Part shown: positions 26,717 to 64,000 of the stretch, in pieces
Layout: the number at the start of each line of letters is the position of its first letter
Numbering within the stretch: position 1 is the first letter of the stretch
Assembly (NCBI RefSeq): GCF_016432865.1
Contig: NC_067400.1
Coordinates: 556,636,001-556,700,000, forward strand
From: Antechinus flavipes
Taxonomy: Eukaryota
Reading direction: 5' to 3'
DNA length: 64,000 nucleotides
Translations under genes and position numbers: made by a program
The notes under the pieces: generated by a model
What the model was told of the DNA's origin: nothing
The model's database searches: none
Seen by the model: only the letters and a program-made list of their open reading frames with translations

Positions 26717-27667
26717 CTAAGGCCTTAATCTGGGCAGACAGAACCTGCGGAGGATACCATTCCTAATCTGTTTGGTTTTAACACTATAGATAATTGGATT
26801 CATAAATGGAGGAAAAAGGAAATAGACATAGCTCATAGTGATGTGGACCACATGTGGGGCATGTTTCCCAAATCGATGAATCAGAGACAAACCAATCACT
26901 GTGACATAGAAAACTAAGACACAACAAATGTGGGAGATACAGGTATTTAAAGCCTTGGTCCGTTCCTCTCCAGAGGCAATGCTCATAACAGTTTTCAGAA
27001 TCAGTATATAAGAGAAAAGAATTATCAGGGAGTCCAGGAAGAAGGTAAATGAAACCAGAACCATAGGATAGATGCGATTGAAAGTGATGTCTGCACAGGC
27101 CAGCTTGATGACATCCTGGTGGAGGCAGAAGGCATGGGAGAGAACATGGGAATGGCAGTAAGGGAACCAGTGTAGTGGGATAATTGGCGGTGCTACTAAT
27201 ATGAAGCCCCTCAGCAATGCCCCAATGCCAATTTTTGCCACTCTGGAGTTGGTGAGGATAGACCTATATCTTAATGGGTTGCAGATGGCAATAAAACGGT
27301 CATAGGCCATGGCAAGCAAGACCCCCGACTCCACTATAGAGAGGGAATGGATGAAGTAGGCCTGGGAGAAGCAGACTTCAAGGTGAATCTCCCTGTAATT
27401 CAGCCACAGGACCCCCAGCACTGTGGGCATGGTGGTTAGGGTCACTAAAAGGTCTGTGGCTGCCAGCATGGCCAGGAAGTAATACATGGGTTCATGGAGA
27501 CTATGGTCATCCTTGATGAGAAAGAGGAGGGTACCATTGCCAAGAATCACTGAGAAGTATACAACAAAAAAGGGAATAGAAATCCAGTGATGAACTGCCT
27601 CTAAGCCTGGGAATCCGGTTAGAAGAAAGGGGGATAAACTTGTATTATACCACATAATGGTGTACAT
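26717..27667 (-). CDS. OR51B5: Class I olfactory receptor, OR51B5-like body with an OR51B6-like C-terminus (316 aa; alternative ATG at 27655 gives 312 aa)
   Basis: Intact ORF with [60 protein letters not shown] and [16 protein letters not shown] are B5-like. Confidence 0.9.
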
Positions 27668-28539
27668 GTCTAAGACTCAGTGAGGTTGCTTAATATATAA
27701 GAGCCATTGGGTCCATCCTAAAAATATACAGAGTTACTTCCCACAGTGAGGTTGTTCAGTCTTATAGAAGAAAAAGAACTGAGATTTCAGGATATAGTTT
27801 GAACTTGGATCAAGTATTAAAGATGATGATTCCAAGGCTTTCCCTGTAGTTTGGCTCCTAACTTTAGCAGAATTCCTCAGCTTTAAATTCTGGTAGGGAC
27901 CATTTTTATCATCATATCATCCCTTGGCTTTTTGTTCTTTGAAGTCCTTCTAATAATGGAATTGACTTGTCTTTCTGATTAATTGTAGTCCATTGTTCCC
28001 AACACATGTATCCAGTTAGACTTATTGTCCCAGGAACATAGGTCTCTCCTTTCTTTTTTCATTTCTCCCTGTAAGTCATGTTAGCAGCATGCTTTGAGAC
28101 CTGCATTGGTAAGGGAAACCATTAAATTACTATAGATTATATAATTTATAGAATAGACTATTTAGGCTAAAATATCATAGAATTAGTGGTTTAAATTTTA
28201 TAGTATAATTAGTCCAATCTTCTCATTCTAGTAATAAGGTAACTGAGTACTATTGGGGTTGAGTGACTTGTTCAGAGTTGCATAGACTGTAAGCAGCCAA
28301 GGCAGAATCACAAGTCCCTTCACCATAAATGAATGAGCAGATCCACTTCAGAGGGTAATTCATTTCTGTCTTTTTCCTTCATGAGAGAGATCTCATGAGA
28401 GATGAGAGATATTTCTAATCTTTTGAGGGGGTCTGTCTTAAAGTAATGTTTAAAAATGCATAAAAAATACAAAAGGGCTACAAAGAAAATCAATTGTATT
28501 GATAAATAGTTATGAAAAAAAATTAAGTTCACAAGCTCC

Positions 28540-29950
28540 CATTAGATTTTTGGAGAAGAGAGGAATTTGTTAAGGGGCAGGTCAATTCTCCGAGAGCCTC
28601 CATAACTGTGGATCATAGCATCTGAAGGAGTTGCAGGGCAGCCTTTGCTGACACATTCCAAGCAAATCTTGGAATGAAATAAATTGGAGGCAGAAAGAAG
28701 AGGAGAAAGGTGAGATAATGGAACCGCCTCTAGTCAGAGAGGTCAGAGAACAGCAACTGCCTCTCAGTCTCCTTGTATCATCGTCTCACATGAGGACATC
28801 CATTTTGCAGGTCTGGATTGTATCTCCACTGTCAAACAGCTCCTGTGTCACAAAAGGAATGTATGACCAAAGAAGAACTAAAGAACATTATGAAAGGCAA
28901 AATGAACAATGTTGATTATATTAAATTTAAAAAGTTTTGCACAAACAAAACCAAGAGAAACAGAATTTAAAAGAAAGTACAAAACTGAGGGGGGTAGAAT
29001 CTTATAGCTAATATTTCTGATAAAATATTCCTAAAGTAAGTAAAGAATTGTGTCAAATTTATAAGAATACCTGTCATTTCCCAATTGATAAATGGTCAAA
29101 GGATATGAACACACAATTCTCAGATGAATTTAAAGCCATTTATAATTATATGAAAAAATGCTCCAAATAACTTTTGACTAGAGAAATGCAAATGAAAATA
29201 TCTCTGAGATACCATCTCAAACTTCTCAGATTGGCTAAGATGACAAGAAAGGACAATGATAAATATAGGAGGGGATGTGGGAAAACTGGAACACTAATAC
29301 AATGATGGTGGAGTTGTGAAATGATCCAGCCATTCTGGAGAGCAATCTGAAACTATGCCCAAAAGGCTATAAAACTGTAAATACCTTTTGACACAACAGT
29401 CCCATTATTAGACCTCTATCCCAAGGAAATCATAAAAGAGGAAAAAGGACCTCCATGTGCAAAAATGTTTATAACAACTCTTTTTTTGAGCAAAGAATTG
29501 GAAAATGAGTGAGTGCCCATCAAGTGGGAAGTGGTTGAACAAGTTGTCGTACATGAAGGTAATGGAATATTATTGTTCCATTAAAAACGATGAACATAGA
29601 AAAGCCTGGAAAGATTTACGTGAACTGATGCTGAGCAAAACAAGCAGAACTAGGAATGCATTGTACCCAATAATAGCAAGAATGTGCAATAATAAATTAT
29701 GAAAGATTTGGTTCTTCTCAGTAGTTTAGTGATCCAAAAGAATCCCAATAGACTTTGGACAGAAAATGCCATCTGCAACCAGAGAAAGAATTAAGGAGAC
29801 TGAATGTAAATCAATATATGCTATGTTCACTTCTTTTTTCTAATCTTTTATCTCTTCCATGGTTTTTCCCGTTTGCTCTGATTTTTCTCTCCCAATATAA
29901 TTCATAAAACAATTACGAATAAAAATTCATAAAATTAAAACAAATTTAAA
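28540..29950 (+). mobile_element. 5'-truncated L1 (ORF2 C-terminus and 3'UTR)
   Basis: gattatattaaatttaaaaagttttgcacaaac (DYIKxKxFCTN), ccagccattctggagagcaatctg, L1 3'UTR and an A-rich tail. Confidence 0.88.
28568..28852. mobile_element. Solo LTR (family A), copy 2, inverted relative to copy 1 and inserted in L1 ORF2
   Basis: tgttaagggg...gtgtcaca. The L1 text tggagaagagaggaatt resumes as aaaggaatgtatgaccaaagaag after it. Confidence 0.75.
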
Positions 29951-30561
29951 TTAATTAAAATTAAACGATTAACAAGTAAAAATTGTTAAACAATTTAAAA
30001 TAAACAAACTAAAATTAAAAATAAACTAAAAAAAAGTTCACAGGCTCCAATTTGAGAACTTTTAAGTCAATAAATTTCTATAACTGTTGTAATATCCCAT
30101 GCCTTCTCATTTCTCCTTCTTTTAGTCTGTCATCTTTCCTGGCTCCTATATAGAAATTCTATCTGTCTTCTAGTTCTTTCTCTCTTTGGCTTCCTCCTTC
30201 CTACTTTAGAAACTTTACTTCTGATACTGTGATGTTGGGCAAGTCGCATTACTTCCCAGATTAAAATCTGTATCTCTGGTGGAAAGAAAGAGATAACATC
30301 TTTTGACCTTGACATCTTCTTATTGTCTGAGTTCTTTCCATATACAAGAGCCCCTGTGAACTATTACCATGTTTCCATGAAAATGTAGGTACCCACCTCT
30401 CTATCATAGAAGATCTTAATCAGATCCCTACATATTTCAAGGGGAATACATCTGTTACCTATTCAGATGTACTCACAAAATCATCAAGTCAAAGAATTAG
30501 AAGGTAACTCAAAGACCCCTATACCAGGAAGAAAAAAATCCTCTCTATAAAATACCCATTC

Positions 30562-30698
30562 ATGGAGCAGCTAGGTGACAGAATCTAGTGAATAGAGGAC
30601 CTGCCCTAGAGTAGGAGAACCTGAGTTCAAATCTGTCCTCAGATGCTTAACACTTCCTAGCTGTGTGACCTTAACCCCAATTACCGTGCCAAGAAAAT
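30562..30698 (+). mobile_element. WSINE1-type SINE
   Basis: gcagctaggtgacag...gaacctgagttcaaatctgtcctcagatgcttaacacttcctagctgtgtgacc...aaccccaatt. Confidence 0.85.
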
Positions 30699-30769
30699 TA
30701 TCCATCCAGACTTTGTTTAAAGGCACATAGTCTTGGCTTTAAGACCATATTTTCCAAGGAAGCTCATTC

Positions 30770-31340
30770 CACTTTGAGAAAATTCCTTTTAATAAGATGT
30801 TTTTCTTTCTTTTACATCAAACTTAAATATGTGTCTTAGAATTGTCATAAATTGCTACTATTTCTATCACCTATGATCAGATAGAAAAGATCTAATGATT
30901 TTTTTTCCATAACAATACTTCAATGGTTTCCAGATAGATATCTTATCTCCTCTTTTTTCTTCTCTAGGCTAAATACTTCCATCCAGTCCTTTGACTGATC
31001 CTCATATGAGAAGGACCCAAGACCTTTCAGCATCATGACTGCCCTCCTCTGAGGGCATAGAGAGTTCTATGGGTGATCAATCCCCTTCTTAAAATGGAAT
31101 GCCTAGAACTGGACACTACTCCAGATATGGTTTAATGTGAGCAATAGACACTATCATCTGCTCAGCCCTTCTCAGTATCATATTAGCTTGCTCTATTACA
31201 AAATCCCACTGTGGACATATACTCTTTGTCATCCTTCAGAACCCCAAGATCTTTATCTCAGATGGACTAACTTTTAGACAATCCTTTCTTATCTCATAAT
31301 ATGAAACTCATTTGTTGAGCCCAATTGTAAAATGTTACAT
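30770..31340 (-). mobile_element. CR1/L3 LINE fragment
   Basis: cttctctaggctaaatacttcc...gaactggacactactccagatatggt is typical of antisense CR1 ORF2. Confidence 0.6.
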
Positions 31341-33102
31341 ATTAAGTCACCCAATGTTCTAGCCACATGGCTCCCCTAAAATTATGGAGATCCTGGAATC
31401 CAGATAATGCAAGTGAGTCTTCATTAAGAGATAGAAGTATCTAGGTGACACAGTAGGTAGAGTACTAGACCTGGAATCAGAGAAAGACATAACTTCAAAG
31501 CCAGGGTCAGATACTTACTAGCTATAACATCACTTTGAGTTAAGTGGTATGTGCTTTATGTCATTTATAGAATTTGAAATTCAGGAGAGGTCATTAGGCT
31601 TGCCTAAATGCACAGAGGAACTAAATGAGGAATACTTAAAACAAGTATTCTGATCCTAATCCTAGATCTCTTGCCACTGTTACCTATTCCCTTACTCTTT
31701 AGGCAAATGAAGCATATTAAAGGATATACTCAACCTCTTAAATTTGTAAATTGGGAATTGAGACACAGAGCAGGAAAAGAAACTACCCAGTCATTTAGCC
31801 ACAGCTTCTTGGAATCCTACCCCCTGCTATAAATCCAGCCTTGGATATTAAAGACCTTCTCTGATTCATTCTACTCCACCACAGACTAAATGATTTTGCA
31901 TCAGCCTTGAGATATTTACTGACTTTTACATTAATCAAACTGTTATCATGCTCAGTAACTCATAGATAAACTGAAGCAGATTGTCACAAAGTAGATATTG
32001 TCATTATGCCTCATCTTCTTTAATAATCCCTCTTTCACTTCTGACCCTTTCAATCCATTATGGCTTTATTATATTTAGAATCCTAAATTTGGTGGTGGGA
32101 GCTGCTCTGGGGTGCCTGGGCACAATCCCAAAGGGATAAAGGAGCGATAGGGAAATTCTAGAGATCATACTAGGAAAGACAAATGGGGAGATGAGAACAA
32201 TATTTAGGAAAACTGAAATCCCTTTCCCTTCAGAGCTCACAGCCTCCTCACCCTTCTATCCAGTTTCTTCCCAAATCCTGATTTTCAAACACATTTCCCA
32301 CAAAGAATGTGGCTTTTTAACCCCATAAAAAAAAGGAGAAAATGACATTGAGATCAACTATCTCCAACTATCCAAAGCAGCATATTATTCACCAGGAAAG
32401 TACTTGAATATGGAACTCCCTTGCATTTCTTAATGGTTATTTGGGTCATAAACTCATGGTTGCTCCTTTCTAATCAGAGAATTTAAAAATTTGGAAAGAA
32501 CATTTTAAAAATTAGTATATCCAATACCCCAATACATAGATGAGGAAACTCAGTCTCAGAGATAGATAAGGATGTATATCTATGAATGCAGGCATTGTGG
32601 ACTTCTATATTTGTCACTTACTATTCAAAGTCTTTAATTCCAGATAAAGGACTCCTCTAATTCATATTACCCCGTTTTCAGAGTTCAGGGAAACATAGGG
32701 AATCATCCCTGAAATTCTTTTACTTCTGAATTCTCATTGCTCTCTGTTCACCAAAGGCACTGCTGAAATATTGGGATGAAGTCAGAATTCATTGATACCT
32801 GGATGAGCTCTCAGACTGCAGGCTATAGTCTCTGATTTTACTTGGAATCCCAACTGGACTCTTGATATTTATGCTGTAAACTGGCTCCCCAGAGCCCTTT
32901 CCTCTTCCAAAACACTAGAGTCTTGGGTGATCTCAACTTCCCTCCCCAAATCCCCATTTTTATCCTGTGAAGATCTGGACTCCTTAAGGCATATTTTGAA
33001 AATCTCTCAACTTCTTCCCTGTACTGAAGGGGAAAGATTAGAGTAGATTTAGTCACTCAAGATTAACTTCTGTAGAGCAAGGAGGGAGGAGCAGACATAG
33101 GG

Positions 33103-33734
33103 TGTAATGCTGGAGAAACTGAGGCAGAAGAGAGATTAGAGAGTTTTTAATATTTTATTAATGGGAGAGTAAAACTGACGGGACAGGACTCTCATCTCAA
33201 ATTATCCAGTCAGACAGAGATAAAAATATACTTTGATAAAGATAAAGATTCCTTGGTCCCAGGACTGGAGGAGACTGTCATCTCAAAGAATCCAGCGTCC
33301 AGCATACAGCCACCAGCTGCCAGCCTCCAGCAATGAATTGAGGAACCTCTACTTCTTAAATACCTTTTCTCTAAACAAAGGAAGGGGTGAGAAGTGTGGG
33401 AAAAAACTTCTGTCAGGATGGAGGAGGCCATAAACCCAAAAAACACAGAGACACGATGTCTGAATACACAGAGATAAAGATGTCAGTGAAATATCTTGAA
33501 ATATTTTAAAGGGATATTGTATATTCTTGAGGAAAGAAAAGAGTCAGGAGGTCTACTCTCCTGTTTATCTTGCTAACAATTTATAACCTTAGAGCAAATG
33601 GCCCTCAATCTTAATGGACCAGAGCCCGGGTTACAACTTAGGGGATTGACACAGAACAGTTAAAGAAACTGAAACAAGGGAAACTAGTACAGGGAAACTG
33701 AGTCAGGACAGTTAAAGAGAACTGTGGCATAACA
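33103..33734 (-). mobile_element. Solo ERV LTR (family B), copy 1
   Basis: tgtaatgc...ggcataaca TG/CA ends, AATAAA on the minus strand near the end, 4 bp TSD aggg/agga. Termini are shared with 46296-46826. Confidence 0.85.
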
Positions 33735-34137
33735 AGGACTATAGGACAAAGTTTTAGATTTGGTTTTAAAACAACTGGATGTGAATAATGGCTTCCATCT
33801 TTCCAATTGTGAGATTTGGGACAATTCAATGCATTTAAGTTCCAGTTCCTTCTTCTGCAAAGAGAAGAAAACAATGCTTGTTTTACCTGCCTCAGGAGAC
33901 TGCTGTGAAGAAAGCACTTACAAACTTGAAAGAACTCAGGGAGTGTGGAATGTTTCTTTTTCTATCCAAAGACTTCAGGGTCTCCCAATTACTTATCAAA
34001 TAAAATATTGACTCTTTTGCCTAGCAGGCTCTTCACAATCTATTTCTACTTTATTTCTAGTTTTGGTTTCTATTACTCAGCTGTCATGAATTTTACATTG
34101 CAATCAGAGTATTCTCAATATTTTCACAACAGGAAAT

Positions 34138-34154
34138 TTGTGTGTGTGTGTGTG

Positions 34155-34190
<36 letters not shown>
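34138..34190. repeat. (TG)n microsatellite
   Basis: Read directly from the sequence. Confidence 0.95.
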
Positions 34191-34239
34191 ATGTAACTTT
34201 ACTCTTGATATTCACCAAAGGGAAGCTTAGTGCCACAAT

Positions 34240-34490
34240 AGATAAGAGATCATGATTCAGATTCAGGAAGATGAGTTCAAATCCAATCACAGACATTTAC
34301 TGGCTTTGTGACTTTGGACAAGTTCCTTAAATATTTTCTGCCTCAGTTTCCTCATCAGTAAAATGAGTATAATAATAATGCTACCTTCCCCCGAGGGTTG
34401 TCTGGGAGCATCAAACAAGATAACATATGTAAAGTCTTTGAAAACCTTAAAGCACTTTAGAAATATGAATCATCATCATTATCATCATCA
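34240..34490 (+). mobile_element. MIR SINE
   Basis: gagttcaaatcc...gtgactttggacaag...gcctcagtttcctcatcagtaaaatgag...aaagcactttagaaat, followed by a (ATC)n tail. Confidence 0.8.
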
Positions 34491-35230
34491 TAATTCTCCG
34501 TCTCTTACTTAACATCTTAACATAGTCTCTCATAGCTGCTGCCTGTTTTTTGAAGGCATGCTGGGCTGTTTATATTGGAGTGAAAATGGATGGAAGGAGA
34601 CAAAAGAGAAGCATTTATTTAGTGTTTATTATGTATTGGGCACTTTCAAATATTATCTCATTTGATCTTTATAACAACTTTATGCTATTATTATTCACAT
34701 TTTCCAGTTGAAGAAACTGAGGCAGATAGAGCCTAAATGACTTGCACACATTTATACAGCTAATGTCTTGTGGTCAGATTTGAATTTAGATTTTCCTATC
34801 TCCAAGATCAGTATTCTGTCCACTACAACTAAATAGTGCTATTAGCAGAACATTGATCTGATGACCAAGGGAATTGTATTTTTCTATCTCTTTCTCCCCT
34901 TAAGAGACTTCAGTGGACAAAGTACCAGTGGTGACTTCATGGGATACTGGGACTTTATTTCTGTCTTTTCTCCTAAAACAACCTTGAGCCAGGCACCTCA
35001 TAGGAAAGCAGTGGCTAGGAGAAAGTTAAATCATGGGATAGTATCTCTGGGAGCTGCAGGAACCCAGGAATCACACCTTTTCTTTTTTTTTTTTTTTTAC
35101 AAGTTAATTACATGACGACTGATGTAAATGGAGCTGCTAAAGAGATAAAGAGCTCACCATCACATTTTTCATATTTCTGCTACCTATAGAAACTCAAGCT
35201 ATCACTTACTAGGGAATATACTTTGTAATT

Positions 35231-35247
35231 TGGTCAGCAGGTGGTAC
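35231..35247 (+). promoter_or_regulatory. CTCF core-like motif 1
   Basis: TGGTCAGCAGGTGGTAC; 2 mismatches to TGGCCAGCAGGTGGCAC. Confidence 0.4.
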
Positions 35248-35303
35248 TATCCTTAGGTCACCAATTAAATGGAATAATTCAAGGATATTGTTTTTTCTGA
35301 ATG

Positions 35304-35336
35304 CTGTAGTAACCCCTACTTGTCACCAGAGGGCGT
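35304..35336 (+). promoter_or_regulatory. Extended CTCF motif (upstream module, 6 bp spacer, core)
   Basis: CTGTAGTAAC-ccctac-TTGTCACCAGAGGGCGT versus the consensus CTGCAGT(T/A)CC-N5/6-TGGCCACCAG(A/G)GGGCGC. Confidence 0.65.
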
Positions 35337-35339
35337 TCA

Positions 35340-35480
35340 GGCAAAAAACTTTGGTAGGGTTCATGAAATTGTTTTTATTGATTTTTTATTAACTATTTCA
35401 ACATAATTAAGTTTCTTAGCAGCCTAACTTTTTTTATGCATTTAAAAATATTATTCTGAGAAGAATTCCATAAATTTTAC
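35340..35480. mobile_element. hAT-Charlie MITE remnant
   Basis: ttcatgaaattgttttt...gcatttaaaaatattattctgagaagaattccataaattttaccaaact is similar to the MITE at 60689-60884. Confidence 0.5.
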
Positions 35481-35487
35481 CAAACTT

Positions 35488-35680
35488 TGTCCAACTCTTC
35501 ATGACTCCTTTTGGAGTTTTCTTGGCAAAGATACAAGAGTAGTTTTACCATTTTCTTCTCCACTTTATTTTACAGATAAGGAAACTGAGGACAAGAGTAT
35601 TCAGTAACTGGACCAGGATTACACAGCTAGTAAGTGCCTAAGGCCAGATTTGAACTCGGAAAAATGAGTCTAGGTGATTA
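35488..35680 (-). mobile_element. MAR1-type SINE
   Basis: tgtccaactcttcatgactccttttggagttttcttggcaaagatac...gataaggaaactgagg...ggccagatttgaactc. Confidence 0.8.
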
Positions 35681-36374
35681 GATTTCTTAAAGCATAATAT
35701 TAAAAAGAAAGTACTTCTGATCTAAGAGTATGGAAATACAAATGAAAAATTAATTTGAAATACTAAGATTGTGGAAATTTCTATCAGAACACTCCAATCA
35801 ACCTATCAATTTATGTTAATAAAGCTCAGTTGATATTCTTTCCAAGGCAAAAAGGATGAAGACCTCAAATTAGCGGGTTGTAGCATGTGAGTGGGAAAAA
35901 GTGGAATTTATGAGAGATTTCGAGGTAGAATTCATAATTTACTTGGTTCTATTCTATTGAATTCTAATCTAATCCAATCTGATCCAGTCCAATTTAATCC
36001 ACTCAAATCCTATTCAATGAAATGTAGACATTTATTCAGCATAGTTATAGATAGCATTATATAAAGTGCTTTATGAAAGAACAAAGTAAAAGCAAAAAAG
36101 AATAGTAATAGACATGCCCTGATCTCAATCTGTTTACATTGCACTGATAAGACATTACATGCTATTACTATAAAATTCTTGAATAAGTTGCTGTTATGAG
36201 ATCAGTATAATTAGATCTAGATGAGATACCAACATACACTCATGTGGCTGCATGTTCATATTATTTCAAAAAAAAGTGGAATTTAAATAAATACATAATA
36301 GATTAATAATATATCTTCCTTCAACATGTTGCTCTTTGTTGTATATGAAATATATGTACTAAGTATGCAATAGC

Positions 36375-37950
36375 TTTTTCAATTCTAATTTTGCTTGAAT
36401 CTAAATGTTTTAAAATTGCAAAACCTTGTGTTCTGAATTTTTTCTCTCTCTTCTCCCCACTCCTTCCCCTAGATAGTAAGTAATACAGTATATGTTAAAC
36501 ATGTACAATCCTTCTATACATATTTCTACAATAATCTTGTCGCACAAGAAAAATCATATCAAAAAGTAAAAAAAATGAGACAGAAAGCAAAATGCAAGCA
36601 AACAAAAACAAAGAGTGAAAATATTATGTTATGATCCACATTAAGTCCCCACAGTCCCCTCTCTGAGTGCAGATGACAAGACCATTGGAACTGATTTCAA
36701 TCACTTCATTGTTGAAAAGAACCACATCCATCAGAACTAATCATCATATAATCTTGCTGCTATACAATGATCTCCTGGTTCTACTCACTTCACTTAGCTT
36801 CTGTTCATGTAAGTCTCTCCAGGCATCTCTGAAATCATCCTGATGATCATTTCAATAATATTCCATACCATTCATATTCCATAATTTATTCAGCCATTCT
36901 CCAACTAATAGATATCTACTCAGTTTTTAGTTTTTTGCCATTATGAAAAAAGCTGCCATAAACATTTTTGGACATGCGGGTCCCTTTCCCTCCTTTTATG
37001 ATCTCTTTGGGATACAGGCCCAGTGGAGCACTGCTGGATCAAAGGGTATGCACAATTTGATTGCCCTTTGGGCATAATTCTAAATTCCTCTCCAAAATGG
37101 TTGGATCAGTTCACAACTCCAACAACAATGTATTAGTGTCCCAGTTTTCCCACATCCCCTTCAACATTTGTCATTGTCTTTTCCTGTCATCTTAGCCAAT
37201 CTCAGAAGTATGTAGTAGTACTTCAGAGTTGTCTTAATTTGCATTTCTCTGATCAACAGTGAGAGAATCTTTTCATATGACTAAAAATGGTTTTAATTTC
37301 TTTATCTGAAAATTGTCCGTTCATATCCTTTGACCATTTATTAATTGGAGAATGGCTTGAAGTCTTATAAATTTGGGTCAATTATATATTTTAGAAATGA
37401 GGGCTTTATCAGAACCTTTGAATTTAAATTCCCCCCCTCAATTTATTTCTTCTCTTCTATTCTTGTCTGCATTAATTTTGTTTGTTCAAAAATGTTTTAA
37501 TTTAATATAATCAATATTATTAATATTGCATTTCATAATCTACTCTAGTTCTTCTTTGGCCACAAATTCCTTCCTTCTCCACAGATGTGAGAGATAGACT
37601 ATCCTTTGTTCTTCTAATTTGCTTATAGTATCACTCTTTATGTCTAAACCATGAACCCATTTTGACCTTATCTTAATATAGGATGTTAGGTATGGGTCAA
37701 TGCCTAGTTTCTGCCATTCCAATTTCCAATTTTCCCTGCAACTTTTAGTAATAGTGAGTTCTTATCCCAGAAGCTAGAGTCTTTGGGTTTATCAAACACT
37801 ACATTGCTATAGTTATTGACTATTGTGTCTTGTAAACTTAATATATTCCACTGATCAGTAACTCTGTTTCTTAGCCAGTACCAAATGGTTTTGATGGCTG
37901 CTACAGTATAGGTCTGGTGCAGCTGGGGCACCTTCACTTGAATTTTTTTT
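36375..37950 (-). mobile_element. 5'-truncated L1 (ORF2 C-terminus and 3'UTR)
   Basis: ORF-track fragments AIKTIWYWLRNR..FDKPKDSSFWDKNSL and WQKLGIDPYLT..SKWVH are L1 ORF2. Confidence 0.9.
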
Positions 37951-38249
37951 TCATTAATTCAAATTAAAAGTACACTCGAAAATACTAAACAGTACTTTTG
38001 GTGATGAAAAAAAAAAAACCCTCTGGAAAGTATGAGAATTTCCAACAATTAAGGAATGACTTAATAAGTTATGGTATATGGCTATAAGATTAATATTCCG
38101 TAACAAATGAGAAAATAGATAACTTTCAAAATTTACAGGAAAATGTATATGAATTGATAGTGTGAAATGAGCAGAAAGAGAAAAATAATTTGTATTATAT
38201 TATATAAATAAATTATATTTTATATTTTAAAATATTGTACACAGAAGCT

Positions 38250-38306
38250 ATACACACACACATATGTGTGAGTGTGTATCATAAATCACAGACTCTGTGT
38301 GTGTAT

Positions 38307-38340
<34 letters not shown>

Positions 38341-38350
38341 GAGAGAGATG
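38250..38350. repeat. Compound (CA)/(TG)/(GA)/(GACA) microsatellite
   Basis: Read directly from the sequence. Confidence 0.85.
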
Positions 38351-38570
38351 TTCAGTTCTCTTAGTCGTTTTCAATTCTTCACGATCCCCTTTTGGGTTTT
38401 GCTTTTGCAAAGATACTACAGCAGGCTGCCATTTCCTTCCCCATTTCATTTTACAAATGAAGACACTGAGACAAACAGGGTTAAGTGGCTTGCTAGTAAA
38501 TGTCTGAGGCTGAATTTGACCTCAGTTTTCCCTACTCTAGTTCTATATTTGCTTCCCCTTCCTCCAACTG
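38350..38570 (-). mobile_element. MAR1-type SINE
   Basis: gttcagttctcttagtcgtttt...cttcacgatcccttttggg...aaacagggttaagtggcttgc...gaggctgaatttgacctcag. Confidence 0.75.
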
Positions 38571-39139
38571 TGATAAATTTGAAAAGAAGAGAAAACAAAT
38601 AGATTTCTTTTTGGTTTTATTTTTCTTTAAACAGACATGTAGAAAAGTACTATAGAAATGAAATGCATGAACTTTTAGATAGGAACTATATTATTAATTT
38701 TATTTAACTGCTTTATTTTGTTACAGGTAATCTGGGAATAATCTATACATGTTTGTAATATTAAAAAAATCAACAAAATAGAAATAATACCATGATCTTC
38801 AAAATTTTACTATTCTGTGGCAAAATTCTGTTTACCCTACTCTACTTTTACCACTGACTAGGAGCCTTGACTTCTAGTTCCTGCATTTATTTTCTTACAA
38901 GATCATGTTAGGGCTAAAGCACAGGTAACAAGTCAAGAAGAGAGAGGACGAGGGTGATATTTATCAGTTATTCAAGGTCATTTGGATGGGGTCAAGGTCT
39001 TACTATATTTTCATTAGACCCAGACTACCTCTTATGGGATCTCACTATTTAGAAACTAATATCCTCTTCTTCAGACCTTGCTACCACTTCATGGCTTCTC
39101 ATGTTCTTTTCCCCAACCCCTAATCTTGAGCTACCGTAA

Positions 39140-39402
39140 CTGCTCACCAGCCCAGGGACTTAGGAGTCCTTAGGAAATAGCTGAGGGACCAAAAGATTCC
39201 CCAGATACCTAAGCAGAAGGTACCCAAGCAGAAATTCCCCAGAAATCTGACAAAAAGGGTGAAGTTTCCTGAGGAGAATTCATCTTGGATAAATGTGCCA
39301 CCTCATGTGCCTCTGAAAAGACTCCAGTGACAATGGCAGAAATGAGCCCTTGGATAAGATCAGAGTTTTTTCCTCAGCACTGTGGCACTGGCTCTGGTGA
39401 GT
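39140..39402 (+). promoter_or_regulatory. Candidate promoter and non-coding first exon of the OR51B6-like gene
   Basis: Cluster of O/E (EBF)-like sites (cccagggact, tccttaggaa, ttcctgaggag) in non-repeat DNA, followed by the consensus donor CTG|GTGAGT at 39396/39397. Confidence 0.4.
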
Positions 39403-40206
39403 GAGGGGGAATAGGAAATAGATGTGGGGAGTGGATTTGCCTTTAGATCTGATTTCCTTACCATCTTTATAAATGGAACAGAGAAGCCTATTCTCAGTAT
39501 TCTGGCATGACTGCATGGACACTATTCAGCTTAAAGAGACAGTTTCATAGAATTTTTGACTCAGAAACTCACACAGAAAGATCACATTTGATCTCAAGTC
39601 CTGTCTTTGATATAATAGAAAATCTGCTCTTGAGTTAGAAGTTATAGGTTAAATCCTCTCCCTTCTATTTACTTATTATGTGATTTTGGATTAGAATAAT
39701 TTAATCTTCCCATACTTCAATGTATTTTTCTATAAAAGCAGGGAATTGTGTTAGACAGCTTCTAAGGTCCCTCCTAAACCTGTAATTAAAATTCTCTGTC
39801 TGTTTTCAGAAAAATAACTTAGCTTCTCTGAACCTCAGTTTCCTTCTATAAAATCAGAGTTTTGGATTAGATGTCCTCTAGAGTCACTTCCAACTTGAGC
39901 AATTCTCAGGACAGCTTCAATTGAGACTTAAGTCAAGCTTCCTTATTCTCTCTTATAAGAGTCCACTTATTTCTGGAACAGAAAAGAGAGGATTTAGAAA
40001 AGAATAAATGGAAAATGGATATACAATCCTAGGGATATAATGTCCATTTCTACATCTGTATAATTCTCTTTTCAATACTAAACATCCTCTCATCTCCCTC
40101 AATATAAACCCTAAGGACCTCCCAAAGCATTTCTCAGCTCTCAAACAAGGACTGAAAATGCATGTATCTTTTTCCAGGCTGTTGTTTGGATAATTATAGA
40201 AAGGGT

Positions 40207-40377
40207 NNNNNNNNNNNNNNNNNNNNNNNNNNNNNNNNNNNNNNNNNNNNNNNNNNNNNNNNNNNNNNNNNNNNNNNNNNNNNNNNNNNNNNNNNNNNNN
40301 NNNNNNNNNNNNNNNNNNNNNNNNNNNNNNNNNNNNNNNNNNNNNNNNNNNNNNNNNNNNNNNNNNNNNNNNNNNNN
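40207..40377. other. Assembly gap (171 N)
   Basis: Run of N. Confidence 1.
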
Positions 40378-41324
40378 GGAGAACATTGCCTGAGCACTAA
40401 ATAAGACCAGAGAAAGACCAAGAGTGAATTTCTCTAAGGCATCATCTACTCCTAGGAAAACTCTAGAGCTTGACACTTTAGGTTTCTAGAGGGCTTAGTG
40501 ATGCCCAGAAAGACAGAAACACTGCTTGAGCTGCTCTAATACAGTGATCCATAGAATTTTCTAAAATTTTGTGAATTTAACACATCTTAGACATGTCAAT
40601 AGCCAATAATCACATGAATATAGTCACCTATAATAAAATATCTAGACCCCATATGCTATGTGTATTCATGTAAATATCTATAACTTTGTCTAGCATATCA
40701 AAGTTTTGTGAATAATCATGATTTTTCAGCTTGTGGAACTCCATTGTAATTTTTATGACACATATATAAATATGGATATGAATATATACATATATGATAT
40801 GTATGTGTATACATACATACATACATACATACATGAGTCAGCAGGGTGTGGGGCAAACTAGTCTTAAAATCAACAAAACCTGGGTTTGAGTCCCACTTTT
40901 GAAATATATTTACTGTGTCATCCTAAGAAAATCACTTAGCCTTTTAGAGAGAATAGGCAACTCTTTAAGACCATTGAAAAATAGTTGCCAATCTGTGTAA
41001 TAAATACACACAAGTAAAATCACAAATTTGACTTTCTGTGTATTTATTTATTTATTATTACTTATGTATGCCTGTTTGTATATGTATACACACATATGTG
41101 TACCCCTCTACTCACAAACATACTTATATCTATGCATATAGCTGTAATATTAATTTTGATCCAGATCTGTGATTTCAACTGTGTGGAACTTAGAATTTAA
41201 AATCTTCAGGAATTTACTGGGAGCACTAAATGGTTACTTGATTTGTATAGAGTCACACAGTAATTTTGTGATAAGGACTTGAACCCAAATCTTCCTAACT
41301 CTAAGATCCATTTTGTCATGCCAG

Positions 41325-41466
41325 GAGACAGAGAGGAGAGGTCAAGAGAGAGAGTGAAAGAGAAAGAGAGAGAAGAGAGAGATACACACACAGAGAAAGA
41401 GAGAGACAGAGATAGAGATAAAGAAAGATAGAGACAGAGACGGAGAAACAGACAGAGATAGATAGT

Positions 41467-41548
<82 letters not shown>

Positions 41549-41635
41549 AAACAGAGAGAGAAAATAAGAGAGAGAAATATGCTGATAATATAGAGACAAA
41601 TGGACAGAAACAGAAGCATAACTGAGATAAAGAAG
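41325..41635. repeat. Long compound (GA)n purine tract
   Basis: Read directly; it produces the Leu/Ser-rich spurious ORFs at 41206-41752. Confidence 0.95.
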
Positions 41636-42949
41636 AGTGTGTGTAATAAACACAAGTATATACAGTATATACAGGCACACATACAATTGTAATTGTGATT
41701 TGTAGGTACAAGGAAGCAGAATCTGACACCACCCTGTTGTCACTTTCTTCAAATAGATTTTGTTACCTCCTGTTACCAGTAACTTTAATCTTTTGAATTT
41801 TCATTCACACAGTATCTTTTCCTCTGTATTAGATTAAGAAATAGCTTACAAGAAATATAAGCTCTTTCTCCTTACTTTGTAAGAGATATGATAACTGGAG
41901 TTTGCTAGCAAAAAGAGGCTAGAATTCCAAACAGAGGCATTTTTGATACAAGGCTTCACAATGTTCTAGACAAATAGAGACAACCAAGAAAGGTAGAGCT
42001 TTACAGAGCTTCTACCTTTATTAAAGTGGGTCTGCAGATAAGAGGAGACTTTCTGTAATTTCATCCACAATTTTAGCCAGTAATGCCATGATAGAACTAG
42101 TTTCACATCCTAGGATACAGCAGCATAATATAGAAAGATATTATTTGTGATGATAAACTTGCAAAGACCTATCCAGGTTCTTCTGGAAAGACTTGGCCAT
42201 TGAGTTAATAAAATGGGATTTTCTCCCTTTCTTTGATTGAGATCCAAGTCACAAGCCCAGGGACACATAGTTAGTAGATGTCCTAAATGACACTTGAATC
42301 ACTACTCCTTTGGTTCTCTTCTCTCTATTACTTCATGAATCACCTCAACACTAATGCAACAGAGTTACTTTGAGGATCAAATGAAGTAGTACATGTGAAG
42401 TCCTTTGCAGATTTTAAGTGTTATCTGCACATAAGTTCTTAAATGGAAAGCAACAAGTTGAAGTCACAGGGAGACAGAAAAAAAAATGTTCTAATCCTTA
42501 AAGCTCTCAAAAAAAAAAAAAAATGGAATGGAATGGGATGCCCTGGGAGATAGAAGATTCTCCATCAGTAATTTATCACGTGACTAGGAAAAGGGAAAAA
42601 GTGACTGGGAAGTATAGTATCTGATCACAGATACCAAAGTAAAGGCCAGATGACTACTGATCAGAGATTTTGTGAATTGGCTCCTTATTCAGGCATAAAT
42701 TGAACTAGATGATTTCTGCCTCCCTCATCAGTTCTAAAATCATATCATTCTATGTGTCTGTTTCCTATCCCTCAGGCTTTCCAAAGAAAAGACAAATCTT
42801 TCTCTTTCTTGCTGTCCCTGAATTAGCACTGGGAAAATGGGCAGTATTTAAATAAGTCCTTTGCTTCAAGAAATCCCCAAGGCTTGGGAAGTATAAATTA
42901 CAGCCTCCAGAAGGGAGTCTTTTTTACCTGTAAAGACCCCCCTTCCAAC

Positions 42950-43891
42950 ATGTGGTCCAACAGCAGCAACAGTGCCCCCTTTTTGCTGACTGGTTTCCCA
43001 GGCATGGAAGCAACTCACCGCTGGATCTCTATCCCCTTCTTTACAGTATATGTTTCTGTTATTTTTGGCAATGGCACTCTTCTCTTTCTCATAAAGAATG
43101 ACCACAGTCTCCATGAACCCATGTACTATTTCCTGGCCATGCTGGCAACCACAGATCTTGGAGTGACTTTAACTACAATGCCCACAGTTCTGGGGGTCTT
43201 GTGGCTGAATCAGAGAGAGATTGGCCATGGCATCTGCTTCTCTCAGGCTTACTTCATCCACACACTGTCTATAGTGGAGTCAGGTGTCCTGCTCGCCATG
43301 GCCTATGATCGCTTTGTTGCCATTTGCAACCCACTGAGATACACAACTATCCTTACCAATTCCCAGGTGATAAAGATTGGGACTGTGGTACTGATGAGGG
43401 CTGCTTTATCTATTATGCCCATAATTGTGAGACTTCACTGGCTCCCTTATTGCCATTCTCACATCCTCTCTCATGCTTTCTGCCTTCACCAGGACGTCAT
43501 CAAGTTGGCTTGCGCTGACATCACCTTCAATCGCCTCTACCCTGTTGTAGTTGTGTTTGCAATGGTTCTAGTGGACTTTTTAATTATCGTCTTCTCTTAT
43601 GTTCTGATACTCAAGACAGTCATGGGCATTGCATCTGGGGAAGAACGGGCCAAGGCCCTCAACACCTGTGTGTCCCACATTTGCTGCATCCTTGTCTTTT
43701 ATGTCACTGTAGTTGGACTGACTTTCATCCATCGCTTTGGGAAACATGTACCGCATGTGGTCCATATCACAATGAGCTATGTCTACTTTCTTTTCCCCCC
43801 ATTAATGAACCCAGTGATCTATAGTGTCAAGACTAAGCAAATACAGAATGGTTTTCTCCGCATGTTCTCTCATCATAAAACTGGAGCATAA
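42950..43891 (+). CDS. OR51B6: Class I olfactory receptor, OR51B6-like body with an OR51B5-like C-terminus (313 aa from ATG at 42950)
   Basis: Intact [37 protein letters not shown] and [16 protein letters not shown] match human OR51B6 as remembered. Acceptor-like tcttttttacctgtaaAG at 42935; AATAAA at 43954. Confidence 0.92.
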
Positions 43892-48959: not shown

Positions 48960-50803
48960 TTTTTTTTTTTTTTTTAATAATAAATTTTATTTTATTTAAT
49001 AATAACTTCGCATTGACAGAATCCATGCCAGGATAATTTCTACACGACATTATCCCTTGCAATCACTTATGTTTCGTTTTTTCCCCCTCCCTCCCTCCTC
49101 CCCCCCCCCCAGGATGGCAAGCAGTCCTATATATGCTAAACATGTTGCAGTATATCCTAGATACAATACATATTTGCAGAACCAAACAGTTCTCTTGTTG
49201 CACAGGGAGAATTGGATTCAGAAGGTAAAAATAACTCGGGAAGAAAATCAAAAATGCAAATAGTTTACATTCATTTCCCAGTATTCCTTCTTTGGGTGTA
49301 GCTGTTTCTGTCCATCATTTCTCCAATGAAACTCAGTTAAGTCTCTTTGTCAGAGAAATCCACTTCCATCAGAATACATCCTCATACAATATCGTTGTCG
49401 AAGTGTATAATGATCTCCTGGTTCTGCTCATCTCACTTAGCATCAGTCCATGTAGGTCTCTCCAAGCCTCTCTGTATTCATCCTGCTGGTCATTCCTTAC
49501 AGAGCAATAATATTCCATAACATTCATATACCACAATTTACCCAGCCATTCTCCAATTGATGGGCATCCATTCATTTTCCAGTTTCTAGCCACTACAAAC
49601 AGGGCTGCTACAAACATTTTGGCACATACAGGTCCCCTTCCCTTTTTTAGTATCTCTTTGGGGTATAAGCCCAATAGAAACACTGCTGGATCAAAGGGTA
49701 TGCACAGTTTGATAACTTTTTGGGCATAATTCCAGATCGCTCTCCAGAATGGCTGGATTCATTCACAACTCCACCAACAATGTATCAATGTCCCCGTTTC
49801 CCCGCATCCCCTCCAACATTCATCATTGTTTTTTCCTGTCATCTTAGCCAATCTGACAGGAGTGTAGTGATATCTCAGAGTTGTCTTAATTTGCATTTCT
49901 CTGATCAATAGTGATTTGGAACACTCTTTCATGTGAGTGGTAATAGTTTCAATTTCTTCATCTGAAAATTGTCTGTTCATATCCTTTGACCATTTATCAA
50001 TTGGAGAATGGCTTGATTTTTTATAAATTAGAGTCAGTTCTCTATATATTTTGGAAATGAGGCCTTTATCAGAACCTTTAATTGTAAAGATGTTTTCCCA
50101 GTTAGTTACTTCCCTACTAATCTTGTTTGCATTCGTTCTGTTTGTACAAAGGCTTTTTAATTTGATATAATCAAAATTTTCTATTTTGTGATTGGTAATG
50201 GTCTCTAGTTCATCTTTGGTCACAAATTTCTTTCTCCTCCACAAGTCTGAGAGATAAACTATCCTATGTTCCTCTAATTTATTTATAATCTCGTTCTTTA
50301 TGCCTAGGTCATGGACCCATTTTGATCTTATCTTGGTATGTGGTGTTAAGTGTGGGTCCTTGCCTAATTTCTGCCATACTAATTTCCAGTTATCCCAGCA
50401 GTTTTTATCAAATAATGAAATCTTATCCCAAAATTTAGAATCTTTGGGTTTGTCAAACACTAGATTACTATAGTTGACTATTCTGTCTTGTGAACCTAAC
50501 CTTTTCCACTGATCAACTAATCTATTTCTAAGCCAATACCAGATGGTTTTGGTGACTGCTGCTTTATAATATAATTTTAGATCAGGTACAGCTAGACCAC
50601 CTTCATTTGATTTTTTTTTTCATTAATTCCCTTGAGATTCTCGACTTTTTATTGTTCCATATGAATTTTGTTGTTATTTTTTCTAAATCATTAAAATATT
50701 TTCTTGGAAGTCTGATTGGTATAGCACTAAATAAATAGATTAGTTTAGGGAGTATTGTCATCTTTATTATATTTGCTCGGCCTATCCAAGAGCACTTAAT
50801 ATT
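48960..50803 (-). mobile_element. Young 5'-truncated L1 (1844 bp)
   Basis: Perfect 14 bp TSD TAGAAAAGTTACTT (48946-48959 / 50804-50817) and a poly-T tail. ORF2 is readable from [18 protein letters not shown]; there is one TGA at 49759 where Trp is expected, and a homopolymer slip near 50610. Confidence 0.97.
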
Positions 50804-63838: not shown

Positions 63839-63973
63839 NNNNNNNNNNNNNNNNNNNNNNNNNNNNNNNNNNNNNNNNNNNNNNNNNNNNNNNNNNNNNN
63901 NNNNNNNNNNNNNNNNNNNNNNNNNNNNNNNNNNNNNNNNNNNNNNNNNNNNNNNNNNNNNNNNNNNNNNNNN
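63839..63973. other. Assembly gap (135 N)
   Basis: Run of N. Confidence 1.
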
Positions 63974-64000
63974 NTCTGGTAATATAATAATAATAAATAT

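What the first reader, a model, noticed from the sequence alone, without database searches (positions are those of the whole stretch)
35130..35340. Tandem co-oriented CTCF motifs plus a GATA site between the divergent OR51B genes: candidate marsupial counterpart of the distal beta-globin insulator/HS element
Seen: a repeat-free island of about 0.5 kb holds TGGTCAGCAGGTGGTAC (35231-35247). It also holds CTGTAGTAAC-N6-TTGTCACCAGAGGGCGT (35304-35336), a CTCF core with the upstream ZF9-11 module at the canonical spacing, and CTG-N6-AGATAA (35134-35148), which resembles a half-E-box/GATA site. Established: in mouse (HS-62.5/-60.7) and human (HS-111/-107), erythroid hypersensitive sites lie among the ORs upstream of the beta-globin genes; the mouse site binds CTCF and loops with the LCR and 3'HS1. 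Inference: if globin lies toward higher coordinates (the OR51Q1 side is distal in eutherians), both motifs point toward it, as expected for a loop anchor. This would suggest that the globin chromatin hub has a marsupial anchor inside the OR cluster.
Basis: partly seen in the sequence, partly recalled or inferred. Interest (0 to 1): 0.72.

Follow-up and report, generated by a model that had tools for sequence, protein, structure and literature searches.

The report
Old paired CTCF motifs between smell-receptor genes
Two neighbouring binding motifs for the chromatin-loop protein CTCF really sit between two smell-receptor genes of the yellow-footed antechinus and date back to the common ancestor of marsupials, but they are weakened here and nothing ties them to the beta-globin genes.

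Summary
All three motifs are at the stated coordinates. The genome is Antechinus flavipes. The element lies about 7.5 kb from each of a divergent OR51B5-like(-)/OR51B6(+) pair.

With a CTCF matrix recalled from memory, the two sites are the two best matches in the whole 64 kb. They are 89 bp apart on the same strand, in single-copy DNA.

The same pair sits at the orthologous spot in all 10 other marsupials fetched, opossum included. Site 1 is near-consensus in koala, sugar glider, brushtail possum and opossum. It is weakened in dasyurids, and both sites are destroyed in the Tasmanian devil.

Substitution rates in the motifs are not clearly below the neighbouring intergenic DNA, and neutral-decay simulations give only weak evidence of selection.

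The GATA/half-E-box is at chance level and confined to dasyurids.

No counterpart was found within 10 kb of armadillo OR51B5 or OR51B6.

The + gene is a true OR51B6 orthologue, and human HS-111 lies beyond OR51B6, next to OR51M1. So this doublet is not at the HS-111 position, and gene order suggests it may point away from globin.

This scan noted a separate conserved CTCF site upstream of OR51M1, on other DNA 24.8 kb past this window; that is the better positional candidate.

Verdict: an ancient, probably real but eroding CTCF site. The globin link is unsupported.

The parts
35231..35249 (+). CTCF-like core motif, site 1 (TGGTCAGCAGGTGGTACTA)
   Evidence: Best matrix hit in the window, 18.2 bits. 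Orthologous sites score 30.0 in koala, 28.5 in Petaurus, 26.3 in Trichosurus and 24.2 in Monodelphis. The site is deleted in Sarcophilus and decayed in Dromiciops.
35304..35313 (+). Upstream (M2 / ZF9-11-type) module CTGTAGTAAC, followed by a 6-nt linker at 35314-35319
   Evidence: 7 of 10 positions match the CTGCAGTTCC-like upstream consensus quoted in PMC12885311. GCTGTAGTAA is kept with few changes in all 11 marsupials. The linker is 5 nt in non-dasyurids and 6 nt in dasyurids.
35320..35338 (+). CTCF-like core motif, site 2 (TTGTCACCAGAGGGCGTTC), with a CpG at the methylation-sensitive GGCG position
   Evidence: Second-best matrix hit in the window, 17.5 bits, and the only IUPAC core match with up to 1 mismatch. 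Orthologues score 22.0 in Dromiciops and 20.0 in Monodelphis. In diprotodonts the CpG has become TpG (16.7 bits). The site is lost in Sarcophilus, bilby and Trichosurus.
35134..35148 (+). CTG-N6-AGATAA; judged NOT part of a functional element
   Evidence: Chance frequency. Present only in the three dasyurids. This is the fastest-evolving stretch of the island, at 2.0 changes per column.
35095..35480 (.). Single-copy island that carries the doublet
   Evidence: No other copies apart from a short AT-rich stretch, 35382-35461, that matches 28436-28520 at 73%. Alignable in all marsupials. No Rfam family matches.
35480..35690 (+). Old MIR/MAR1-type SINE flanking the island on the right. A second MIR-type SINE flanks it on the left at about 34600-34830.
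   Evidence: Multi-copy in the window and the loci, and orthologous in the other marsupials.
26717..27667 (-). OR51B5-like olfactory receptor gene; its 5' end faces the element, 7.5 kb away
   Evidence: Pfam 7tm_4, E = 4.9e-111. Orthologues are named OR51B5-like. It falls in a marsupial-only OR51B clade.
42950..43891 (+). OR51B6 orthologue; its 5' end faces the element, 7.6 kb away
   Evidence: Pfam 7tm_4. It forms a clade with eutherian OR51B6, SH-aLRT 99. This holds for both the N- and C-terminal parts.

Best explanation
This is an ancient tandem pair of same-orientation CTCF-binding motifs. It lies in unique DNA midway between the divergently transcribed OR51B5-like and OR51B6 olfactory receptor genes.

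The pair already existed in the last common ancestor of living marsupials. At that time site 1 was a strong, near-consensus site, and site 2 was a good core with an upstream ZF9-11 module.

The most likely function (inferred, not shown) is a CTCF/cohesin site that acts as a local boundary or loop anchor inside the class-I OR array. Two sites 67-89 bp apart would give redundancy. Most lineages keep at least one strong site, and the weaker site varies between lineages.

In dasyurids the element is eroding. The antechinus keeps two medium-strength motifs (p about 1e-6 each), so occupancy here is uncertain. The Tasmanian devil has lost both.

Both motifs face higher window coordinates, toward OR51B6. 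Nothing in the sequence marks the element as erythroid or links it to beta-globin.
For: The motifs rank 1 and 2 in 64 kb, lie 89 bp apart on one strand, and chance pairs occurred in 0 of 300 simulated windows.

An orthologous doublet is the top matrix hit in the 21-kb loci of 9 of the 10 other marsupials. Site 1 scores 24-30 bits in koala, Petaurus, Trichosurus and Monodelphis. Site 2 scores 22 bits in Dromiciops, which has lost site 1. Eight of 11 species keep at least one site of 20 bits or more, against 4.3-5.8 expected under neutral decay (P = 0.05-0.2).

The upstream module is kept in all species, and its linker stays at 5 or 6 nt. Published work says this module marks high-affinity, insulator-type CTCF sites, and that tandem sites insulate more strongly (PMC12885311, PMC11417384 and PMC7087399).

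The DNA is single-copy, so this is not a SINE-borne motif.
Against: There are no occupancy data for any marsupial at this site.

Substitution density in the motifs (0.74 and 0.95 changes per column) is not significantly below local intergenic DNA (0.98). The whole island is no slower than its surroundings.

The neutral-decay simulations give P = 0.005-0.2 for site 1 and 0.05-0.7 for site 2, depending on the threshold and on the assumed ancestral base.

The antechinus copies each carry two penalised core positions. A crude consensus search is at chance level.

The devil lost both sites, in two independent assemblies, so the element is dispensable at least there.

The matrix was recalled from memory.
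Confidence: 0.55

Rival explanations
1. Fossil site. A CTCF site that worked in the marsupial ancestor, and perhaps still works in diprotodonts and opossum, is no longer bound or needed in the antechinus. What we see is slow neutral decay in slowly evolving DNA.
For: The motifs evolve at about the local neutral rate. Dasyurid copies are the weakest of all species. The devil lost both sites through an 18-bp deletion plus three changes in site 2, where 0.6 changes were expected on that branch (P = 0.025). Simulation P values are mostly above 0.05.
Against: Both antechinus motifs still pass usual scan thresholds, p about 1e-6. The site-2 CpG and the upstream module are intact in antechinus and Sminthopsis. 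Two medium sites side by side can still load CTCF.
Confidence: 0.27
2. One reading: this is the marsupial counterpart of the distal beta-globin CTCF anchors (mouse HS-62.5/-60.7; human HS-111/-107 or the '5'-OR51B5-CBSs'). It would loop with the LCR and 3'HS1 in erythroid cells.
For: In eutherians the OR51B genes adjoin the beta-globin LCR. The human locus has 'two closely spaced upstream CBSs' named after OR51B5 (PMC8500713). The mouse distal sites interact in a CTCF-dependent way (PMC2243019). The marsupial element is a two-site, same-orientation CTCF doublet next to OR51B5-like.
Against: The globin genes were not located.

HS-111 lies next to OR51M1, beyond the B genes, and this element does not. 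A separate conserved CTCF site upstream of OR51M1 was noted by this scan (s1-198800), and it fits that position better.

The orientation of OR51B6 and the gene order suggest that the motifs point away from globin (plus inference).

The GATA motif is not conserved.

No homologue was found within 10 kb of armadillo OR51B5 or OR51B6.

In mouse these distal sites are in any case dispensable for globin transcription.
Confidence: 0.09
3. Promoter-linked element for OR choice. The island would be the leader-exon or promoter region of OR51B5-like or OR51B6, and the CTCF motifs would work like the promoter CTCF sites of clustered protocadherins.
For: The island is equidistant (about 7.5 kb) from two divergent OR coding exons, a typical distance for OR leader exons. 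AT-rich homeodomain-like blocks at 35364-35415 are the least-changed stretch among Australidelphia. Pcdh promoters carry tandem forward CTCF sites (PMC7087399).
Against: There is no RNA evidence: no RNA run holds the stretch, and the read-laying run failed. The homeodomain-like sites are not kept in opossum. No role of CTCF in OR promoter choice is known to me.
Confidence: 0.07
4. Pure chance: two CTCF-like strings in AT-rich DNA.
For: A crude consensus match is at chance level. A scan of about 250,000 windows would meet one or two such pairs by chance.
Against: Orthologous sites in other marsupials are near-perfect consensus (p = 1e-9 to 1e-11). Zero of 300 simulated windows hold such a pair.
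Confidence: 0.02

Closest known systems
[quoted passage not shown]
   Same: CTCF motifs sit in intergenic DNA of the OR51 array that flanks beta-globin in mammals. They come as closely spaced sites and are probably constitutive, architectural sites.
   Different: Human HS-111 sits next to OR51M1, distal to OR51B6. This element sits between OR51B5-like and OR51B6. No sequence homology to a eutherian locus was found, but only armadillo flanks were tested. The orientation relative to globin is unknown and possibly opposite. There is no conserved erythroid (GATA) signature. Occupancy and looping are untested.
Human '5'-OR51B5-CBSs' (two closely spaced CTCF sites upstream of HS5; Huang 2017, as cited in PMC8500713)
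   Same: Two closely spaced CTCF sites associated with OR51B5 on the LCR side of the cluster.
   Different: Their exact position relative to the OR51B5 and OR51B6 coding exons could not be read from the text held. They are convergent with 3'HS1, so they point toward globin. The marsupial pair points toward OR51B6, which in human is away from globin. No human sequence was compared, by rule.
Tandem or two-part CTCF insulators (IL3 insulator with two sites; Pcdh HS5-1a/b; alpha-globin HS-38 with upstream motif)
   Same: Same-orientation multiple sites, and a core plus an upstream ZF9-11 module at a 5-6 nt linker. This is the class reported to bind tightly and to insulate best.
   Different: Those elements have been tested functionally; this one has not. 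The upstream module here matches only 7 of 10 positions, and the antechinus cores are sub-optimal.
Conserved CTCF site upstream of OR51M1 in the same antechinus cluster (scan note s1-198800)
   Same: Same genome and same OR array, about 53 kb away. It was also judged a conserved CTCF motif with no demonstrated globin link.
   Different: It is a different intergenic interval and a single consensus site. Its position matches human HS-111 better than this doublet does. I could not read its sequence or orientation.

Membership tests
CTCF-binding site (core M1 motif) | High-scoring match to the CTCF core matrix | tested here: met
   18.2 and 17.5 bits, ranks 1 and 2 in 64 kb, p about 1e-6 on a uniform background. 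The matrix was recalled from memory, not fetched. The IUPAC core with up to 1 mismatch finds site 2 only.
CTCF-binding site (core M1 motif) | In vivo occupancy by CTCF and cohesin | not testable with these tools
   No ChIP or ATAC run holds the stretch. Opossum liver CTCF and STAG1 ChIP-seq exist (PMC3368268), but the peaks could not be read here.
CTCF-binding site (core M1 motif) | Purifying selection on the motif bases | tested here: inconclusive
   The sites are orthologous in 11 marsupials. Changes per column are 0.74 and 0.95 against a background of 0.98. Neutral-decay simulation gives P = 0.005-0.7.
Two-part (33/34-mer) CTCF site with upstream ZF9-11 module | Upstream CTGCAGTTCC-like motif on the same strand at the preferred linker | tested here: inconclusive
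   CTGTAGTAAC matches 7 of 10 positions. The linker is 6 nt in dasyurids and 5 nt in other marsupials, against the 'typical 5 bp, range 2-7' stated in PMC12885311. The JASPAR matrices MA1929 and MA1930 were not available.
Distal beta-globin CTCF anchors (HS-62.5/-60.7, HS-111/-107) | Lies on the LCR side of the beta-globin cluster, linked to it | not testable with these tools
   No globin gene lies in the window or in any fetched locus. Scan notes list none nearby. No globin protein id was available for a coordinate look-up.
Distal beta-globin CTCF anchors (HS-62.5/-60.7, HS-111/-107) | Position next to OR51M1, distal to OR51B6 (human HS-111) | tested here: not met
   The element lies between OR51B5-like and the true OR51B6 orthologue. 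The human order OR51M1, HS-111, two further features, OR51B5, OR51B2 comes from the figure legend in PMC2926601.
Distal beta-globin CTCF anchors (HS-62.5/-60.7, HS-111/-107) | Motif points toward the globin genes (convergent with 3'HS1) | tested here: inconclusive
   Both motifs are on the + strand and so face higher coordinates. OR51B6(+) orthology and OR51M1 reported beyond the window's end (s1-198800, unverified) favour globin at lower coordinates. The OR51Q1-like genes at low coordinates argue the other way.
Distal beta-globin CTCF anchors (HS-62.5/-60.7, HS-111/-107) | Sequence homology to the eutherian element | tested here: not met
   Neither the 10-kb flanks of armadillo OR51B5 nor those of OR51B6 hold a BLAST match to any marsupial copy of the island, or a CTCF motif above 13 bits. 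This is one eutherian only. Mouse HS-62.5 itself was not fetched, and human was not compared, by rule.
Distal beta-globin CTCF anchors (HS-62.5/-60.7, HS-111/-107) | Erythroid hypersensitive site with GATA1-type motifs | tested here: not met
   The single AGATAA is at chance level (one WGATAR per 264 bp) and confined to dasyurids. The E-box spacing is 6, not the 7-8 that I recall as canonical.

The most novel reading that the evidence does not exclude
The doublet is one anchor of a loop domain kept across marsupials inside the class-I OR array beside beta-globin. Its partner could be the conserved CTCF site upstream of OR51M1, about 53 kb away. Alternatively, if globin does lie at higher coordinates, it could be the outer 5' boundary of a marsupial beta-globin chromatin hub. 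The Tasmanian devil, which has lost both motifs, would then be a natural knockout.
Probability: 0.1. Interest if true: 0.55.

Novelty: new member of a known kind. Interest (0 to 1): 0.3.

Why it matters
If bound, this would be a CTCF site about 80 million years old that partitions the OR51B genes next to the beta-globin locus in marsupials. Three features make it a convenient natural system for studying turnover and redundancy of tandem CTCF sites. One site weakens where the other stays strong. The linker shifts by one base in dasyurids. Both sites are lost in the Tasmanian devil.

It does not at present tell us anything about the evolution of the globin chromatin hub. In mouse the comparable distal sites are in any case dispensable for globin expression.

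Tried and rejected
- Chance occurrence: rejected.
- SINE-borne CTCF motif, as in the opossum MAR/MIR expansion of Schmidt 2012: rejected. The doublet is single-copy, while the flanking SINE is multi-copy. The typical marsupial SINE-head motif GGGCAGCTAGGTGGCGCAG is a different sequence found elsewhere in the loci.
- Erythroid GATA/E-box composite: rejected.
- Structured RNA: no Rfam hit.
- Inversion with breakpoints inside the two OR coding regions (scan note s1-196648), which would have flipped the doublet: not supported. Both the N-terminal and the C-terminal parts of the + gene group with eutherian OR51B6.
- Eutherian counterpart: not found in armadillo. There OR51B5 and OR51B6 lie 192 kb apart.
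- Locating beta-globin: failed. Scan notes mention none. No globin protein id was available, and I did not type one from memory.
- Key older papers (Bulger 2000; Splinter 2006; Bender 2006) are not held.
- Reads: the look-up of sequencing runs gave only coded, probably DNA, holders. Those places lie in the left SINE, not in the finding.

Full report
**What is there**

The window is AT-rich (about 34% G+C) and comes from the yellow-footed antechinus, Antechinus flavipes. Two things show this. Earlier scan notes name the species. The window's OR proteins sit on the same 636,717,922-bp record as named A. flavipes proteins.

The window holds five intact class-I olfactory receptor genes, all strong Pfam 7tm_4 matches. 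By the names given to their orthologues they are:
- two OR51Q1-like genes, at 905-1849 (-) and 17305-18252 (-)
- an OR51B5-like gene, at 26717-27667 (-)
- an OR51B6-like gene, at 42950-43891 (+)
- an OR51L1-like gene, at 53524-54471 (-)

The finding lies about 7.5 kb from each member of the divergent B5-like/B6-like pair.

**Is it more than chance?**

I scored the window with a CTCF matrix of the JASPAR MA0139.1 type. I recalled it from memory, so absolute scores are approximate.

- The two sites are the best and second-best 19-mers on either strand of the whole 64 kb, at 18.2 and 17.5 bits.
- On the AT-rich background p is about 3e-7 and 5e-7. On a uniform background it is 1.3e-6 and 3.7e-6.
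- The next hits all lie in G+C-richer coding exons.
- First-order Markov simulations give 0.14 such hits per 64 kb. None of 300 simulated windows had a same-strand pair within 150 bp.
- A crude IUPAC core with up to one mismatch finds only site 2, against 0.71 expected. Within this genome alone the case is therefore moderate.
- The DNA from 35150 to 35380 has no other copy in the window or the fetched loci. The flanking MIR/MAR1-type SINE has many.
- The GATA part is not significant. WGATAR occurs once per 264 bp and CTG-N6-AGATAA four times in the window.

**Orthologues**

I started from the 90%-identity cluster of the OR51B5-like protein and a word search. From these I fetched the gene plus 10 kb of flank from Tasmanian devil (two assemblies), fat-tailed dunnart, koala, bilby, wombat, tammar, brushtail possum, monito del monte, sugar glider and grey short-tailed opossum.

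The intergenic region aligns throughout, and the doublet sits at the orthologous position in every species. It is the top matrix hit of the 21-kb locus in 9 of the 10 species.

Matrix scores in bits:

| Species | Site 1 | Site 2 |
|---|---|---|
| koala | 30.0 | 16.7 |
| Petaurus | 28.5 | 17.7 |
| Trichosurus | 26.3 | 7.6 |
| Monodelphis | 24.2 | 20.0 |
| wombat | 23.9 | 16.7 |
| tammar | 23.5 | 16.7 |
| bilby | 23.2 | partly deleted |
| antechinus | 18.2 | 17.5 |
| Sminthopsis | 16.7 | 17.5 |
| Dromiciops | 4.2 | 22.0 |
| devil | deleted (18 bp) | -7.2 |

The devil's losses appear in both assemblies.

The upstream module GCTGTAGTAA is kept with few changes in all species. Its linker to the core is 5 nt, except in the three dasyurids, where it is 6 nt. 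Published work describes a CTGCAGTTCC-like upstream motif, bound by zinc fingers 9-11, typically 5 bp from the core. It is present in 13-15% of sites and enriched at insulators (PMC12885311; PMC11417384; the 33/34-mer of PMC3368268).

AGATAA exists only in the three dasyurids.

**Is it under selection?**

This is the weak point.

I estimated branch lengths from 4,841 aligned local intergenic columns on the accepted species tree. The total came to about 1.2 substitutions per site.

Fitch changes per column:

| Stretch | Changes per column |
|---|---|
| site 1 | 0.74 |
| site 2 | 0.95 |
| upstream module | 0.67 |
| GATA stretch | 2.0 |
| local intergenic baseline | 0.98 |

Site 1 is at the 23rd percentile of background windows and site 2 at the 54th. 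The island as a whole is no slower than its surroundings. An earlier 10-species profile ranked the two sites only in the best 16% and 25% of windows.

I then simulated neutral decay of the inferred ancestral motifs along that tree.
- The observed retention of site 1 has P = 0.005-0.2. The value depends on the threshold and on whether the ancestor had T or C at position 15.
- The retention of site 2 has P = 0.05-0.7.
- Eight of 11 species keep at least one site of 20 bits or more, against 4.3-5.8 expected (P = 0.05-0.2).

There is a suggestive compensation pattern: the species with the weakest site 1 have the strongest site 2. It is not significant.

The conclusion is that the pair is ancient and was ancestrally strong. 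Near-consensus motifs of this kind (p = 1e-9 to 1e-11) are very unlikely to be random sequence. Maintenance by selection is not demonstrated, and in dasyurids the element is eroding. The devil branch carries three changes in site 2 where 0.6 were expected (P = 0.025), plus the deletion of site 1.

**Relation to beta-globin**

Established in the literature:
- Mouse HS-85.5, HS-62.5/-60.7, HS4/5 and 3'HS1 contact each other in a CTCF-dependent way, and they are dispensable for high-level globin transcription (PMC2243019).
[quoted passage not shown] The upstream sites are convergent with 3'HS1 (PMC8500713).
- A figure legend gives the human order as OR51M1, HS-111, two further features, OR51B5, OR51B2, then OR51V1 on the far side (PMC2926601). 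HS-111 therefore lies beside OR51M1, beyond the B genes.

Shown here: a maximum-likelihood tree places the window's + gene firmly with eutherian OR51B6 (SH-aLRT 99). This holds for its N-terminal and its C-terminal parts separately. That also gives no support to the scan note proposing an inversion with breakpoints inside the two coding regions.

The B5-like gene falls in a marsupial-only OR51B clade. The Q1-like pair lies outside OR51B.

The doublet therefore sits in the B5/B6 interval, not at the HS-111 position.

An earlier follow-up in this scan (s1-198800, which I did not verify) reports a separate conserved CTCF site upstream of OR51M1, 24.8 kb beyond this window's end. That site matches the HS-111 position better.

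From memory, human OR51B5 is on the minus strand and OR51B6 on the plus strand, with globin at lower coordinates. If marsupial synteny follows this, globin lies toward lower window coordinates and both motifs point away from it. The motifs are on the + strand, so their 3' (ZF3) end faces higher coordinates. The OR51Q1-like genes at low coordinates argue the other way, because OR51Q1 is distal in human.

The globin genes themselves could not be located with these tools.

**Eutherian counterpart**

The last two locus look-ups went to armadillo OR51B5 and OR51B6. These genes lie 192 kb apart there. Neither 10-kb flank holds a match to any marsupial copy of the island or a CTCF motif above 13 bits. 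This is a negative result for one eutherian only. No human sequence was fetched or compared.

**Other checks**

- No Rfam family matches the island.
- No RNA run holds the stretch. The holders are coded, probably DNA, runs of several related organisms.

**Verdict**

It is an ancient, ancestrally strong tandem CTCF site in the OR51B5/OR51B6 intergenic region of marsupials. It is probably still functional in several lineages, is of uncertain status in the antechinus, and is lost in the devil.

The erythroid and beta-globin reading is not supported by anything tested here, and the element's position contradicts part of it. It is a new member of a known kind and of modest interest. Its main value is as a natural series for studying turnover of tandem CTCF sites.

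Noticed in passing
L001:3631-3730 and L002:3643-3742 (Sarcophilus, minus strand): The Tasmanian devil has lost both CTCF motifs. An 18-bp deletion removes site 1, and a C-to-T change, a 1-bp deletion and a G-to-T change disrupt site 2. The result is identical in two independent assemblies, which makes the devil a natural knockout of the element.
   Followed up: partly
window 35314-35319, and the orthologous linkers in L001 and L003-L011: All three dasyurids carry a 1-bp insertion in the linker between the upstream module and the core of site 2, giving 6 nt against 5 nt in the other marsupials. These may correspond to the two spacings of the published 33/34-mer CTCF motif; this was not checked against the matrices.
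   Followed up: partly
L003:18107-18125, L009:8253-8271 and 769-787, L008:331-349: The marsupial SINE-head sequence GGGCAGCTAGGTGGCGCAG scores 12-15 bits as a CTCF core. This fits the MIR-family (MAR_Mdo) CTCF expansion reported for opossum by Schmidt et al. 2012.
   Followed up: no
window 905-1849 and 17305-18252: Two OR51Q1-like genes form a tandem duplicate about 16.4 kb apart. They carry identical CTCF-like 19-mers inside their coding regions (1457-1475 and 17860-17878, 15.6 bits). In one devil annotation the two genes are fused into a single 629-aa model.
   Followed up: no
window 35347/35348, and 35193/35194 relative to L008: Dasyurids lack about 38 bp just downstream of site 2 that all other marsupials have. 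Trichosurus carries an insertion of about 430 bp upstream of site 1. Monodelphis has about 2.5 kb inserted between the left part of the island and the doublet, and only 67 bp between the two sites.
   Followed up: no
L012 and L013 (Dasypus novemcinctus CM059756.1, 93.99 Mb and 93.80 Mb): In the armadillo the genes named OR51B5 (+) and OR51B6 (-) lie 192 kb apart. The corresponding pair in marsupials is about 15 kb apart. Both are divergently oriented.
   Followed up: no
window 49759-50460 (-): A 233-aa ORF with no Pfam hit. It looks like the C-terminal cysteine-rich end of a LINE-1 ORF2 (it ends ...CWRGCGETGTLIHCWWSCE), so it is probably a LINE fragment.
   Followed up: no
window 40207-40377, 63839-63974 and 41206-41682: Two runs of N (assembly gaps or masked sequence; left untouched) and a long CT-rich low-complexity tract that gives a spurious 158-aa ORF.
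   Followed up: no
window 26717-43891: The scan note on swapped C-termini and an inversion in the OR51B pair is not supported by the split trees. Both halves of the + gene group with eutherian OR51B6, and holding the B5-like clade together with eutherian B6 is rejected for the C-terminal part (p-AU 0.02).
   Followed up: partly
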